Part shown: positions 3,003 through 47,170 of the stretch, piece after piece | Layout of the letters: each line of letters starts with the position of its first letter | Numbering within the stretch: the stretch's first letter is position 1 | From: Macrostomum hystrix | Lineage: Eukaryota > Animalia > Platyhelminthes | Length of the DNA stretch: 64,000 nt | Direction of reading: 5' to 3' | NCBI GenBank assembly: GCA_950097015.1 | Contig: CATNEN010000034.1 | Coordinates: forward strand, 1,798,001-1,862,000 | Translations under genes and position numbers: made by a program | The notes under the pieces: model-generated | Told to the model about the DNA's origin: nothing | What the model saw: only the letters and a program-made list of their open reading frames with translations | Database searches by the model: none

Positions 3003-3708
3003 AATGTGCCTGGGATGTTGGCCCTGAAGGACCTTGGTCAAAATGACAAGACTGGAGTGAAATCAAATTTAGTTAAGTTTTTTAATAATGCGAGTATCTG
3101 ATTGAGCAGGTGTATAGAAAACAAGAATCTGCACCAGGCTAGGTATATTTAGGTATCGAAACAAATACGTCGCGAACAAATTACGAATACAAAGAAAATC
3201 CGACGCACTCTAAAAGTGCAAGCAAAACGATATTGACAAAAAAACATGAGAATTCGAGCAGAGAATATTGAGTCGAAACAAATCTGAGCAGTTGACCAAT
3301 GTACCGCGTACTTTATATAACCATGCCATTCGACATAAATCTCGATTTTGAGCGACAAAAAATCAATCGATAAAGTGTGACACGAACGAGCGAAGTGCAA
3401 AGTAAATGATTTTAGCATTTGAATACGAATGAAAGTTGAAGAAAATCTAGAGAAAATATATTTAAAAAACTCCTAATCACACATGCACAGGTCCCCTATA
3501 TGAGAATCTAATCTTTAGAAGCACAACGCAAAGCATAATATAGAAATCTGAGGCGAAAAAGTATCATAAACTTGAACCGTAGCTTGGGGAAAAAAGCCAC
3601 AAAGTAAAGTGACAAATGTTCGCGAACTAACAAATATCGATGGTTCCGCCGCTCGTCCGTAAAGTTGATCGATCGATCTGGTGGCCAATCAGTTGGACTC
3701 GGTGCCGC

Positions 3709-6700
3709 CTATCGATAGGGTGCGGGGGCTGAGACGGCAAGGTGCAGCCGGCAGTGGCTCAGGTGCTCCTCAGCGGTGGAAGCCGTGTGGCCGCACTCCT
3801 CGCACACGTGCAGTTTCTCCCGCCTCTCCTTGTGCCCGTAGGCCAGCTGCCGCCGGTGCACCTTCTTGATGTGCGACTCCAGCGAGCAGCGCTGCGTGAA
3901 GGCCTTGCCGCAGTCCTCGCACTTGTAGGGCCGCACACCTGCGGGCAGCGGAGGGTGGGGCGGATGCGGTGTGGACTGCTGTGAGTAGCCAGTTTGGGAC
4001 ATGCGGCACTTGAGCAGCGTGGGGGATGAGATATCTAAACTCAAATTCAGCCTCAAGGCACAGTACCTACTCTCCTCAATCTCATCTCTCTCTGTCTCAT
4101 CTCTCCCTGTCTAATCTCTCCCTGTCTCATCTCTCCCTGTCCCACCTCTCCCTGTCTCATCTCTCCCTGCCTCATCTCTCCCTGTCTAATCTCTCCCTGT
4201 CTAATCTCTCACTGTCTCATCTCTCCCTATCCCATCTCTCCCTGTCTCATCTCTCTCTGTCTAATCTCTCTCTGTCTCATCTCTCTCTGTCTCATCTCTC
4301 TCTGTCTCATCTCTCTCTGTCTCATCTCTCCCTGTCTAATCTCTCTCTGTCTCATCTCTCCCTGTCTCATCTCTCTCTGTCTCATCTCTCCCTGTCTAAT
4401 CTCTCCCGGTCTCATCTCTCCCTGTCTCATCTCTCCGCTCTCAACCCAGCCAGGTGTCGCATATTCGATTCTCTCAATTCAAACTGTGAGGCACAAATGG
4501 CTTGTGCTCATAGGCCATTTCACTCTGCTCTAATCGAATGTGAAGGTGCGGAAAGTTTCTGCTAGAAGACAGAAAATGAAGCAAAAACTCGCGCTTGAAT
4601 CCACAGGTGCTCGGGCAGGTGTTGTCACTGATGGCGATAATCAGCTCAGGTGAAATTTGTGGTACAGCTCAGAAGGGCCCCAGCCAACAGGTGAACTGCT
4701 GTACTCACGAATGCTCAAAACCCGCAAAGACCCGCTGACCTGACCCGCTGAGTTTCACAGTTTCACATTTTCTGCCTCGGGTCAGTGTCTGGACTCAGGG
4801 CCTGAAGTCTCACTGCACTGCTCACAGTTTGCTCAGAATTAAGCACCCATTGTTCCCAGCTAAACTCACAAACTACCGTACACTCACAGCCAACCCTATC
4901 GCACCTGTCAATCAGATGAAAACACACGGCCCTGCTTCGAGATCAGAAGCCGCATCTCAGATCCCCATACGGAATTCTCCCAGATCCCATGCGGGTCCCG
5001 ACTCGAAACAAGTCCGACATTGTTCCGGAATGGCCAAACAGCGAGTTGATGGGGCGAAGGAGGCTGGCAAAATGTGGGAGGTCTGTGCGGCAAATATCCC
5101 AATGATCTAAGTTTCAGATGGGATAACAAATACAACCCCATTGTGGAGTCTGGGAGTCGATAACAATGGCCGACTGCTAAGGCAGGTGCGCCCTCATTAA
5201 TTACTAATCCCATCCCAAAATAATTCCCATTGTTATCCCAGATTCCGCTGACTTCCCAGTTGCGCAAGGCGGGCCTCTGGGATCAGCGAAAGTCAACAGG
5301 CCGGGGTCCCAACATTTTTTACACCTCAGCGAAGATCGAGTAGCCTAGGAAGTTGAGGACAGGCCGGTTAAAGAGGATTTTATCCCACTTGAAACTGATT
5401 TTTTCAAGGGGCCTCGCACAGAGCCGCAGCGGGAACTCCGAGGCCCATTAACCTGGGATAAAGACTCGAGACAGAGAGACTCTTTGTTATTCTCCCGCTC
5501 CAAACGGCCCGAAATCCCCTTCGCTACGGCTGATCCCCCGCTAAGCCGTCCAGGGCTCGAGTCCCGGCCGCTGTGGGTGGCGGCAGGTCATTTGGGATCG
5601 GTGAGGCAATGGGAGTAGATTCCTCATCAATTATTAAGTAGCGGACACGGTCTGCTTTTTTGTCACCCTCCTTCATCGCCCAGTCGCCCAGTTGACTGAC
5701 TTTCGCCCACTCGACATCGGACAGGGGATGAGGGAGAAGGTGCCGGGTTGCCTAGCGGGGCACCTGCGAGCTCAAAAAAAGCTCGGGACCCGCAGCCTAG
5801 CGAGCTGACATTGTGCGGAGTGACTGCTGAATTTTTCATGTTTTTCGCAGGCTGCAAGTCACGTGACCCCGAGTGGGATAATTTGGAAAATCGTGTTTTC
5901 TGTTTTCCAGTTCAGGGAGAAATTAATTTGATCCCAGATGCTCAAACCAGCAGCTCAAAAAACTCACCTGTGTGGGTCCTCGTGTGCCGCTTCAGGTCGA
6001 AGGTGTCGTTGAAGCCCTTGCCGCAGTACCTGCACAGATATCGCTTCAGGGTGGAGTGACACTTCAGGTGCCGATTCAGCAGCCGCTGAAGGGAGAACTC
6101 CTTGCCGCACAGCTTGCACTGAAAACTGTTCTCAGACACCTGAGCACCTGTGGGTGGGAGTGACTTCACTCTGTGAGACTGGAGTGACTTCACTCTGTGA
6201 GACTGGAGTGACTTCACTCTGTGAGACTGGAGTGACTTCAATCTGTGAGACTGGAGTGACTTCACTTTGTGAGACTGGAGTGACTTCACTCTGTGAGACT
6301 GGAGTGACTTCACTCTGAGACTGGAGTGACTTCACTCTGTGAGACTGGAGTGACTTCACTCTGAGACTGCAGTGACTTCCTTGTCTAACAGCTAGAATTA
6401 CAGTGATTTGGCTTTACTCGAAGGAATTAGTTTTCACTCAGGAAGTTTCAGTTTAAACCGCTCAATCGTGTTTACAGTTTAGTTGCAGTTTGTCTATCAA
6501 ATTGTTGGGTGGGTCTAAAAGCACTGCCTAATCAATGTTTGACTTCCAGGTGCAACTCGCTGCCTAAAATGCAACACATAATTATGACTTGGATGGGAAT
6601 TGGATCCAGCACGCGACTCGACTGAATAAATCATGGGGATAAATCATGGGGATCAGTCCCGATCGACTGCGTGACAAAAAATATCCCAAATACTTATTAG

Positions 6701-46066: not shown

Positions 46067-47170
46067 GCGGCACCGACTCCAACTGATTGGCCACCAGATC
46101 GATCGATCGACTCGGCGGACGAGCGGCTGCGACGAGTGATTTCAGGTTTCTGTTCTTTTTTTCCGGGTTTTTTTAGGATTCGGGTTGTCAGTTTCAAACA
46201 AAAAGTCGAATCGTTACTCTCAGCCTTTCAACACAATTCTATTTTCAATTGTTTTGTTTCAGCTTTGCGGTTGATTTTTTTGTCAACGCCAGTAATTTCT
46301 CACTGCTGGTTTTAAATTCATTTTCCCGAAGCAGCATTTGTTAGTCTTCATGTCAGCGACATTTTATTTTTTTTCGCTTTCAAATGCCAAATTCTTCGTA
46401 GCTGTCAATTTTCAGCGCTTTGTGCTCAATTGTGAAATTTACGATTTGTTTTGCTTCAGATTTTCAGATGGATTTTTTTAGATTTTTCTACAGTTTACAC
46501 GGCATATTCTCGTCTTCTACTGGACTGAGTAGCATAAGCATCGTTTTCGATTTTTCTTCAAACACTCGTTTTATTTTCGCAAAATTTTCTCGCTTTCAAA
46601 TGAAAAAAATCTTGCACCTCGAAATTAGTTTTGCAAAACAAATGGAATATTGTGTACCAGTTTTATTTTTTCCGAAATTCGTCTTTTAGAAATCGTTCCT
46701 CGTTCGCTTCTCGTTTTCTTCGTCGTTGTTCAAGTCGATCGATCGCATCAGGAGACCAATTTCGTGTATTTCAGTTTTTTTACCATAGACTACTCTAGCT
46801 TATCTCGCGTACAGTTTCAATTTGCGCATATTGTTTCTTTGTCATTAGATTTTTGTTTAAAAAGAAAAAAGTAAAAAATATATAGTGTACTCGTATTCAC
46901 AATGTCTTTGTGCCTGATGCAAATGTGGTATGTGTTAAACAGCCAATAAGAAAATTTAAGCGCAATTGGCTTCCCGTGTTTTGTTTTTTATCTTGAAATG
47001 ACTTAACAGTTTGACTCCCGAGCCATTTTGCCACCCTGTTTTTATACCCTGACAATGATTTGTGCTGCACTTATACGGAACAACATGAGCACACAGGAAA
47101 CTCAAGAACACGGGCTAACTATTTCATTGCGCCTCAGTGCGGCCTTGACAGGCCTTCAAACTTAATCAGA

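What the first reader, a model, noticed from the sequence alone, without database searches (positions are those of the whole stretch)
3648..46128. Two ovo genes in a large inverted duplication with patchwork identity: old paralogs under recent gene conversion
Seen: exon 1, introns 1-2, the proximal promoter and the 3' UTR beyond about 60 nt past the stop are unalignable. Exon 3 differs at many synonymous sites even in the conserved FVNNGYGI[RK]NPL motif. Yet the 3' part of exon 2, nearly all of introns 3-4, both zinc-finger exons (3648-6840 vs 42170-46128) and a kilobase-scale upstream block (11925-14740 vs 35770-39810) are nearly identical by eye. Non-coding DNA being more similar than a conserved coding exon is the reverse of what selection alone predicts. 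Inference: an ancient duplication with repeated intrachromosomal conversion that keeps the DNA-binding domain identical while the N-terminus, promoter and UTR diverge.
Basis: partly seen in the sequence, partly recalled or inferred. Interest (0 to 1): 0.8.

Follow-up and report, generated by a model that had tools for sequence, protein, structure and literature searches.

The report
Mosaic gene conversion between flatworm ovo paralogs
Two old, head-to-head copies of the ovo zinc-finger gene in a Macrostomum-type flatworm keep three stretches, introns and upstream DNA included, about 99% identical by copying DNA between the copies, while the rest has diverged beyond alignment; it is a clean new example of a well-known process.

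Summary
Two intact five-exon ovo genes lie head to head: L on the minus strand (8065-3709) and R on the plus strand (40915-46066). A CLASP_N gene lies between them.

**Near-identical tracts.** Outside the tandem arrays, three tracts differ by only 0.9-2.2%:
- upstream, L 14578-11965 = R 37706-39770;
- most of exon 2, L 7886-7488;
- intron 3 to 61 nt past the stop, L 6826-3648 = R 42180-46127.

**Diverged parts.** Exon 1, introns 1-2, the proximal promoters and the 3' flanks are at random-level identity.

**Synonymous divergence.** dS is about 0.65-0.69 in exon 3 and the first 22 codons of exon 2. In the rest of the coding sequence only 1 of 179 synonymous sites differs (Fisher p = 4e-17). The unconverted dS is similar to that between this species and M. 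lignano orthologues (0.60).

**Reading.** These are old paralogs under non-allelic gene conversion between inverted repeats, probably repeated, with parts that have escaped it.

**Not tested.** I had no reads to check the assembly, and I found no L/R-type orthologue for a cross-species tree.

**Novelty.** The process is well known, and this scan already reports at least eight similar mosaics on other DNA of the same genome. This is a new member of a known kind, of modest interest.

The parts
3709..8065 (-). Left ovo gene (L), five exons: E1 8065-8038, E2 7954-7494, E3 7034-6875, E4 6147-5968, E5 3938-3709 (stop included). CDS 1059 nt.
   Evidence: All introns are GT-AG, the frame is open across phases, and Pfam finds zf-C2H2 in E4 and E5. 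The best named relatives are ovo/ovo-like proteins.
40915..46066 (+). Right ovo gene (R), five exons: E1 40915-40942, E2 41032-41489, E3 41954-42128, E4 43212-43391, E5 45837-46066. CDS 1071 nt.
   Evidence: The exon-intron plan and intron phases match those of L.
3648..6826 (-). 3' homogenised tract of L: intron 3 from 48 nt after its donor, E4, intron 4, E5 and 61 nt of 3' UTR.
   Evidence: Pairs with R 42180-46127. 34 differences in 2571 non-array sites, K=0.013.
42180..46127 (+). 3' homogenised tract of R.
7488..7886 (-). Exon 2 homogenised tract of L (codons 23-153 plus the GTGAGT donor). It contains a PVDLS motif and an FxIxxIL motif.
   Evidence: Pairs with R 41100-41495. 4/363 differences plus two in-frame indels; codons 49 to the end have 0 of 84.7 synonymous sites different.
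41100..41495 (+). Exon 2 homogenised tract of R.
11965..14578 (-). Upstream homogenised tract of L, interrupted by a 16-mer array (12494-12792) and a (TCTCCC)n array (13332-14242).
   Evidence: Pairs with R 37706-39770. K=0.009 (14578-14253) and K=0.022 (13331-11965) outside the arrays.
37706..39770 (+). Upstream homogenised tract of R.
14663..15234 (-). Distal upstream block of L at intermediate divergence (87% identity). It has fully conserved islands of about 35-50 nt, no long ORF and no 3-periodicity.
   Evidence: Pairs with R 35255-35851, K=0.145.
35255..35851 (+). Distal upstream block of R.
35852..37647 (.). 21-mer array of 85 copies, present only in R. L has about one unit at 14640-14662. 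It separates the 87% block from the 99% tract.
6875..7493 (-). Unconverted intron 2 plus exon 3 of L. Single copy in the assembly.
   Evidence: The R counterpart is 41490-42128.
8066..11924 (-). Proximal promoter region of L. It cannot be aligned with R 39811-40914 and carries three L-only arrays (8611-9047, 9924-11079, 11623-11904).
18711..27547 (+). Spacer gene with a CLASP_N (TOG) domain, lying between the two ovo genes. It is not part of the duplication.
   Evidence: Pfam CLASP_N, E=1e-16, for 19140-19796.

Best explanation
Two ovo-family transcription-factor genes arose by an old inverted duplication and now lie head to head around a CLASP_N gene. Non-allelic (interlocus) gene conversion between the inverted copies has continued since then wherever enough homology remained.

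**Still being homogenised, K about 0.01-0.02 (shown):**
- a 2.6-kb upstream block;
- most of the 461-nt exon 2;
- a 3.2-kb block running from intron 3 to just past the stop codon, which holds both zinc-finger exons.

**Escaped and diverged to saturation (shown):** the 28-nt exon 1, introns 1-2, the roughly 160-nt exon 3, the proximal promoters and the 3' flanks.

**Inferred:**
- Conversion is repeated rather than a single event.
- The tracts have been kept alike since the duplication, rather than re-created across already unalignable introns.
- Heterologies act as barriers: array expansions present in one copy only, and exons too short to sustain heteroduplex.
- The result is two genes with different promoters and N-termini but the same DNA-binding domain.
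For: **Mosaic with sharp edges.**
- Identity jumps from about 43% to about 99-100% between adjacent 100-column windows of the alignment, and in the base-level alignment the change falls within a few bases, at L 6826, 3648, 7488 and 14578.
- Synonymous differences are 25 of 56 sites in exon 3 plus the start of exon 2. They are 1 of 179 sites in the rest of exon 2 plus exons 4-5 (Fisher p=4e-17).
- Intron and upstream DNA (K=0.012-0.022) is far more alike than exon 3 (K=0.37).
- The four tract segments have homogeneous divergence (chi-square p=0.22).

**Two separate loci, not one sequence written twice.**
- Within the tracts there are 62 substitutions and 16 gap events.
- Shared arrays differ in copy number: the 24-mer has 9.5 vs 24.5 copies and the 15-mer 23.8 vs 50.8.

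**Both genes are intact** and under purifying selection in their unconverted parts (dN/dS 0.10 and 0.34).

**No other source in the assembly.**
- Each divergent segment is single-copy in the 220-Mb assembly, so there is no third donor.
- The non-array tract sequence matches only its partner, so it is not a transposon.

**Age.**
- dS between L and R is 0.65-0.69.
- dS between the C12 paralog and its M. lignano orthologue is 0.60.

**Edges.**
- Intermediate-divergence shoulders occur at the last 61 nt of the 3' tract (8%), L 14670-14579 (73-78% identity), L 11964-11870 (74%) and the start of exon 2 (about 20%).
- The R-only 1.8-kb array sits exactly between the 99% tract and the 87% block.
Against: - No reads were available, so I could not verify the assembly.
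- No L/R-type orthologue from another species was found, so the expected per-segment tree conflict was not tested.
- The dS estimates rest on only 56 synonymous sites and are close to saturation.
- The 5' edge of the 3.2-kb tract lies inside intron 3, 48 nt from an unconverted exon. A first-time conversion into already diverged DNA would have had no homology to start from there. This fits continuous homogenisation since the duplication, but I cannot prove that.
- The 87% distal block may reflect selective constraint (a regulatory element) rather than a later escape from conversion.
Confidence: 0.8

Rival explanations
1. A single complex event produced the three tracts at one time, with no ongoing conversion. 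Examples would be break-induced replication with template switching between two old paralogs, or one long patchy repair episode.
For: All tract segments have statistically the same divergence (0.9-2.2%, chi-square p=0.22). The tract edges in non-homologous intron DNA are hard to start by simple homologous invasion.
Against: Shoulders of intermediate divergence at several edges, and the 87% block, suggest events of different ages. The exon 2 tract ends exactly where homology ends, as homology-dependent conversion would. The same mosaic is reported for many other gene pairs of this genome, which suggests a steady process (unchecked notes).
Confidence: 0.1
2. The pattern is an assembly or polishing artefact. 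The near-identical tracts would come from collapsed or mixed consensus, or from two haplotypes joined in inverted order.
For: If this is the published M. hystrix assembly, it was built with canu from PacBio reads, purged of haplotigs and polished with Arrow and Pilon. Short-read polishing can blur differences between near-identical paralogs.
Against: - The tracts still differ by 62 substitutions, indels and array lengths.
- The arms are separated by about 20 kb of unique sequence holding a gene.
- The outer flanks are unrelated, so the arms are not alleles.
- The sequenced line is reported as inbred with F about 0.998.
- Polishing cannot create 3 kb of identity out of unalignable DNA.
Confidence: 0.04
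3. The duplication is young (about 1-2% divergence). Later, one copy had its exon 1-3 region overwritten from a diverged third ovo paralog, or those segments evolved extremely fast.
For: The genome has two further ovo-family genes, on contigs C12 and C38.
Against: - Neither copy's intron 2 + exon 3 segment matches anything else in the assembly.
- C12 and C38 are no closer to either copy in exon 3 (pS 0.6 or more).
- Divergence in the unconverted exons is mostly synonymous (dN/dS 0.1-0.34), as expected from elapsed time rather than from rapid adaptive change.
- Intron 2 has nearly the same length in both copies (460 and 464 nt) but K above 1.
Confidence: 0.03

Closest known systems
Interlocus (ectopic) gene conversion between linked duplicates with mosaic tracts. 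Classic examples from my own knowledge: human fetal globin HBG1/HBG2 and the inverted hsp70 pairs of Drosophila. Surveys: PMC3966223 (Caenorhabditis), PMC3924832 (Drosophila), PMC3790853 (human segmental duplications).
   Same: Old linked paralogs. Sharply bounded near-identical tracts that include introns. Unconverted segments with high dS. Tract ends at heterologies or simple repeats.
   Different: Here the pair is head to head around an unrelated gene. The tracts include 2.6 kb of upstream DNA. The gene is a developmental transcription factor rather than a dosage or immune gene.
Other mosaic-conversion pairs noted by this scan in the same genome (TEP, NACHT, EGFR, SLC23, fibrinogen-lectin and HELZ2-like genes).
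   Same: The same genome and the same pattern of homogenised blocks inside anciently diverged paralogs. In the SLC23 case long exons are converted and short exons are not, as with exon 2 versus exons 1 and 3 here.
   Different: Different gene family. Those notes are unchecked by me.
OVO/OVOL/Shavenbaby/LIN-48 family of C2H2 zinc-finger transcription factors. ovo marks eye progenitors in planarians (PMC13692072, PMC13322009).
   Same: Four C2H2 fingers in the ovo arrangement, preceded by the FVNNG.GI.NPL motif. The closest named proteins are ovo-like.
   Different: No SNAG-type N-terminus (the MPK[VS]FLV start seen in P0085 and P0103). Exon 2 instead carries PVDLS and FxIxxIL motifs and has no detectable relative outside this genome. 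The function in this species is unknown.
Alternative-promoter isoforms of the Drosophila ovo/svb locus (my own knowledge; not checked here).
   Same: Different 5' ends and promoters are joined to one and the same zinc-finger domain.
   Different: Here this is achieved by two separate genes whose 3' halves are kept identical by conversion, not by alternative first exons of a single gene. This is a functional analogy only.

Membership tests
OVO/OVOL zinc-finger transcription factors | Four C2H2 zinc fingers: three contiguous, and a fourth after a short spacer. | tested here: met
   E4 encodes fingers 1-2 and E5 encodes fingers 3-4. Pfam zf-C2H2 gives E=1e-10 and 7e-7.
OVO/OVOL zinc-finger transcription factors | Closest relatives by sequence are annotated ovo, ovo-like or lin-48 proteins. 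| tested here: met
   787 hits at E<=1e-10 to the finger 1-2 exon. Named ones include ovo-like 1, lin-48 homologues and Schistosoma 'Protein ovo'. The M. lignano relatives are 79-86% identical.
OVO/OVOL zinc-finger transcription factors | Conserved F/L-V-N-G-G-x-G-I-K-N-P-L motif upstream of the fingers. | tested here: met
   Exon 3 of both copies has FVNNGYGI[RK]NPL. The same motif appears in the fetched ovo proteins.
Interlocus gene conversion / concerted evolution | Significant heterogeneity of silent divergence along the paralog alignment, with tracts much younger than the background. | tested here: met
   pS is 0.45 against 0.006 (Fisher p=4e-17). Noncoding K is 0.01-0.02 against saturation.
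Interlocus gene conversion / concerted evolution | The tracts are not explained by selection, by a shared transposon or by a third donor. | tested here: met
   The tracts cover introns and upstream DNA, and only their arrays recur elsewhere in the genome. The divergent segments are single-copy.
Interlocus gene conversion / concerted evolution | Phylogenetic conflict: converted segments cluster by species, unconverted segments by paralog. | not testable with these tools
   No L/R-type orthologue was found in the protein collections. Genomes of related flatworms cannot be searched here.
Interlocus gene conversion / concerted evolution | Both loci are verified as separate by reads spanning each copy. 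| not testable with these tools
   No read data. The indirect evidence is 62 substitutions, indels and different array lengths.

The most novel reading that the evidence does not exclude
The ovo pair is one visible instance of an unusually strong, genome-wide regime of interlocus conversion in this selfing flatworm. Under this reading, duplicated genes stay under concerted evolution for as long as the species-level divergence within the genus, and they escape piece by piece. Escape would happen when a minisatellite expands in one copy (as at R 35852-37647) or where an exon is too short to sustain exchange. For ovo, the outcome would be a two-promoter, one-DNA-binding-domain module that selection may favour.
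Probability: 0.3. Interest if true: 0.5.

Novelty: new member of a known kind. Interest (0 to 1): 0.3.

Why it matters
- **Dating and orthology.** Anyone dating or assigning orthology to flatworm ovo genes from the zinc-finger domain would take this pair for a very recent duplicate. Exons 1-3 show that it is about as old as the split between this species and M. lignano.
- **Experimental handle.** The pair has two different promoters and N-termini on an identical DNA-binding domain. That makes regulatory subfunctionalisation of a developmental regulator directly testable, because only exons 1-3 and the UTRs can tell the copies apart in RNA-seq, in situ hybridisation or RNAi.
- **Genome-wide view.** Together with the other cases noted in this genome, it suggests that interlocus conversion is a major force shaping Macrostomum gene families.

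Tried and rejected
- **Transposon as the cause of the shared blocks: rejected.** Whole-genome DNA searches return only the partner copy, apart from hits to the arrays.
- **Third-paralog donor for the divergent segments: rejected.** These segments are single-copy, and C12 and C38 are no closer to either copy.
- **Hidden homology in the proximal promoter, exon 1 and intron 1: none found.** blastn at word size 7 and tblastx find only the shared donor site.
- **Non-coding RNA in the shared blocks: none.** Rfam gives no match at gathering score.
- **Cross-species test: failed.**
  - The exon-2 protein has no relative among 1.84 billion representatives, apart from one low-complexity hit.
  - The zinc-finger search found only M. 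lignano orthologues of the C12- and C38-type genes.
  - The best unnamed hits are ovo genes of other animals.
- **Literature: nothing on Macrostomum ovo duplicates or conversion**.
- **Joined protein: not built.** All searches and dN/dS counts were done exon by exon, by reference.
- **Big protein search: used once of three.** More searches were unlikely to change the verdict.
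Full report
**What the window is.** The window is contig C34:1798001-1862000 of a 220,453,370-base assembly in 42 contigs.
- That size and contig number match the published Macrostomum hystrix assembly, given as about 220 Mb in 42 contigs (PMC10468722).
- The closest named proteins are from M. lignano.
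- Earlier notes of this scan call the genome a flatworm.
- I therefore take it as very probably M. hystrix. This is an inference, not a proof.
- About 37% of the window (23.9 of 64 kb) is tandem arrays.

**Gene models.** I built these exon by exon and never joined them.
- The left gene (L, minus strand) has exons 8065-8038, 7954-7494, 7034-6875, 6147-5968 and 3938-3709.
- The right gene (R, plus strand) has exons 40915-40942, 41032-41489, 41954-42128, 43212-43391 and 45837-46066.
- All introns are GT-AG, the intron phases agree between copies, and the coding lengths are 1059 and 1071 nt.
- Exons 4 and 5 encode four C2H2 fingers (Pfam). Exon 3 carries the FVNNGYGI[RK]NPL motif.
- The finger exon finds 787 proteins at E<=1e-10, and the named ones are ovo, ovo-like or lin-48.
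- The genes are head to head. Between them lies a plus-strand gene with a CLASP_N domain.

**The mosaic.** Global alignment of the reverse-complemented left arm with the right arm was tallied outside the arrays. It gives three strata.
- *Near-identical.*
  - L 6826-3648 = R 42180-46127: 34/2571 sites differ, K=0.013.
  - L 7886-7488 in exon 2: 4/363, K=0.011.
  - L 14578-14253: 3/326.
  - L 13331-11965: 21/984.
  - These four segments are statistically homogeneous (chi-square p=0.22).
- *Intermediate.*
  - L 15234-14663 = R 35255-35851 has K=0.145.
  - It shows perfectly conserved islands of about 35-50 nt, no long ORF and no codon periodicity.
- *Saturated.*
  - Exon 1 + intron 1, intron 2, the first 48 nt of intron 3, the proximal promoters (L 8066-11924 vs R 39811-40914; no match even at word size 7) and everything beyond 61 nt past the stop.
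  - Exon 3 is alignable, but only at 71%.

**Coding divergence.**
- In the first 22 codons of exon 2, dS=0.65 and dN=0.06. In exon 3, dS=0.69 and dN=0.24.
- In exon 2 codons 49 to the end, 0 of 84.7 synonymous sites differ. In exon 4 the count is 0 of 40.7, and in exon 5 it is 1 of 54.
- Overall that is 25/56 against 1/179 synonymous sites, Fisher p=4e-17.
- So introns and upstream DNA are far more alike than a conserved coding exon. Purifying selection cannot produce that.

**Alternatives excluded.**
- The non-array parts of both large blocks match only their partner in the whole assembly. All other hits are to the arrays. The blocks are therefore not transposons.
- Each copy's intron 2 + exon 3 is single-copy. 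The only cross-match is the 71% exon 3. No third donor exists in the assembly.
- The two further ovo-family genes, on C12 and C38, are the orthologues of M. lignano Mlig022280 and Mlig007012. They are distant from L and R, with dS of 0.7-1.5 in the finger exons.

**Age.**
- The C12 copy and its M. lignano orthologue differ by dS=0.60 and dN=0.007 over 122 finger codons.
- The unconverted parts of L and R differ by dS 0.65-0.69.
- The L/R duplication is therefore roughly as old as that species split. The tracts are about 50 times younger.
- The estimate is rough: it rests on 56 synonymous sites and is near saturation.

**Mechanism.** The best reading is interlocus gene conversion between inverted paralogs.
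- Several details favour repeated, homology-limited exchange with progressive escape over a single late event.
  1. The tract edges have shoulders of intermediate divergence:
     - the last 61 nt of the 3' tract (8%);
     - L 14670-14579 (73-78% identity);
     - L 11964-11870 (74%);
     - the start of exon 2 (about 20%).
  2. The exon 2 tract stops 6 nt into intron 2, exactly where homology stops.
  3. The 461-nt exon 2 is converted on its own, while the 28-nt exon 1 and the roughly 160-nt exon 3 are not. This fits a minimum length of homology. Another note of this scan reports the same exon-length rule (unchecked).
  4. The 21-mer unit present about once in L (14640-14662) has expanded to 85 copies in R (35852-37647). 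It lies exactly between the 99% tract and the 87% block, as a heterology that blocks tract extension would.
- The kilobases of homogenised intron cannot easily be re-created once diverged, and the 5' edge at L 6826 has no homology beside it. I therefore infer that these stretches have been kept alike since the duplication. This is an inference.

**What I could not test.**
- *Assembly.*
  - According to the paper, the assembly was made from an inbred line (F about 0.998) with canu, Purge Haplotigs, Arrow and Pilon.
  - Polishing might blur the 1-2% figure but could not create the pattern.
  - The tracts still differ by 62 substitutions, indels and array copy numbers (24-mer 9.5 vs 24.5; 15-mer 23.8 vs 50.8).
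  - Read-level proof is still missing.
- *Cross-species tree.*
  - Exon 2 has no relative among 1.84 billion representatives.
  - No L/R-type gene appears among the ovo hits.

**Known or new.**
- Mosaic interlocus conversion is textbook (surveys PMC3966223, PMC3924832, PMC3790853).
- This scan has already reported at least eight such mosaics on other DNA of the same genome.
- No paper I could search mentions Macrostomum ovo paralogs.
- ovo is a key eye-progenitor gene in planarians (PMC13692072, PMC13322009). A pair with distinct promoters and N-termini but one DNA-binding domain is therefore a useful experimental handle.
This is a new member of a known kind, of modest interest.

Noticed in passing
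window 35852-37647 vs 14640-14662: A 21-mer minisatellite of 85 copies in the right arm corresponds to about one unit of unique sequence in the left arm. This looks like a minisatellite born in place after the duplication.
   Followed up: partly
window 7494-7954 (-) and 41032-41489 (+); L015 and P0003/P0007: Exon 2 of both ovo copies carries a PVDLS motif (CtBP-binding type) and an FGISRIL motif (eh1/Groucho-binding type, FxIxxIL). The two other ovo paralogs and their M. lignano orthologues have equivalent motifs, in place of the SNAG-type start (MPK[VS]FLV) seen in two of the fetched ovo-like proteins (P0085, P0103). The motif assignments come from my own knowledge.
   Followed up: partly
G000:C12:3650039-3650206 (L003, L011, L013) and G000:C38:20276288-20276449 (L004, L012, L014): There are two more ovo-family genes in this genome, four in all. 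The C12 copy is the orthologue of M. lignano Mlig022280 and the C38 copy of Mlig007012. No M. lignano counterpart of the window's pair was found.
   Followed up: partly
window 18711-27547 (+): A multi-exon gene with a CLASP_N/TOG domain lies in the spacer between the two ovo genes. Several of its introns are filled with long arrays, for example a 19-mer of 191 copies at 21901-25504.
   Followed up: partly
window 2073-2677 (+): An ORF with a Harbinger/PIF-type DDE_Tnp_4 transposase domain (E=4e-17) lies about 1 kb beyond the left copy's 3' end. It appears fragmentary.
   Followed up: no
window 9924-11079, 34576-35157, 4080-4436, 44933-45695; also the C12 and C38 ovo loci: Related 15- and 16-mer arrays (units rich in CTC and TCTCATCT) recur at hundreds of places in the genome, including inside or beside all four ovo loci. 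About 37% of this window is tandem arrays.
   Followed up: partly
window 14663-15234 and 35255-35851: The distal upstream block is at 87% identity and has islands of about 35-50 nt that are perfectly conserved between the paralogs. It has no ORF and no Rfam match. It may be a shared regulatory element.
   Followed up: partly
G000 contigs C10 and C41 (e.g. C10:492161-492322 and C41:177320-177481): A zinc-finger exon search gave pairs of hits with identical scores on C10 and C41, in mirrored order. Haplotigs or a large duplication may remain in the assembly.
   Followed up: no
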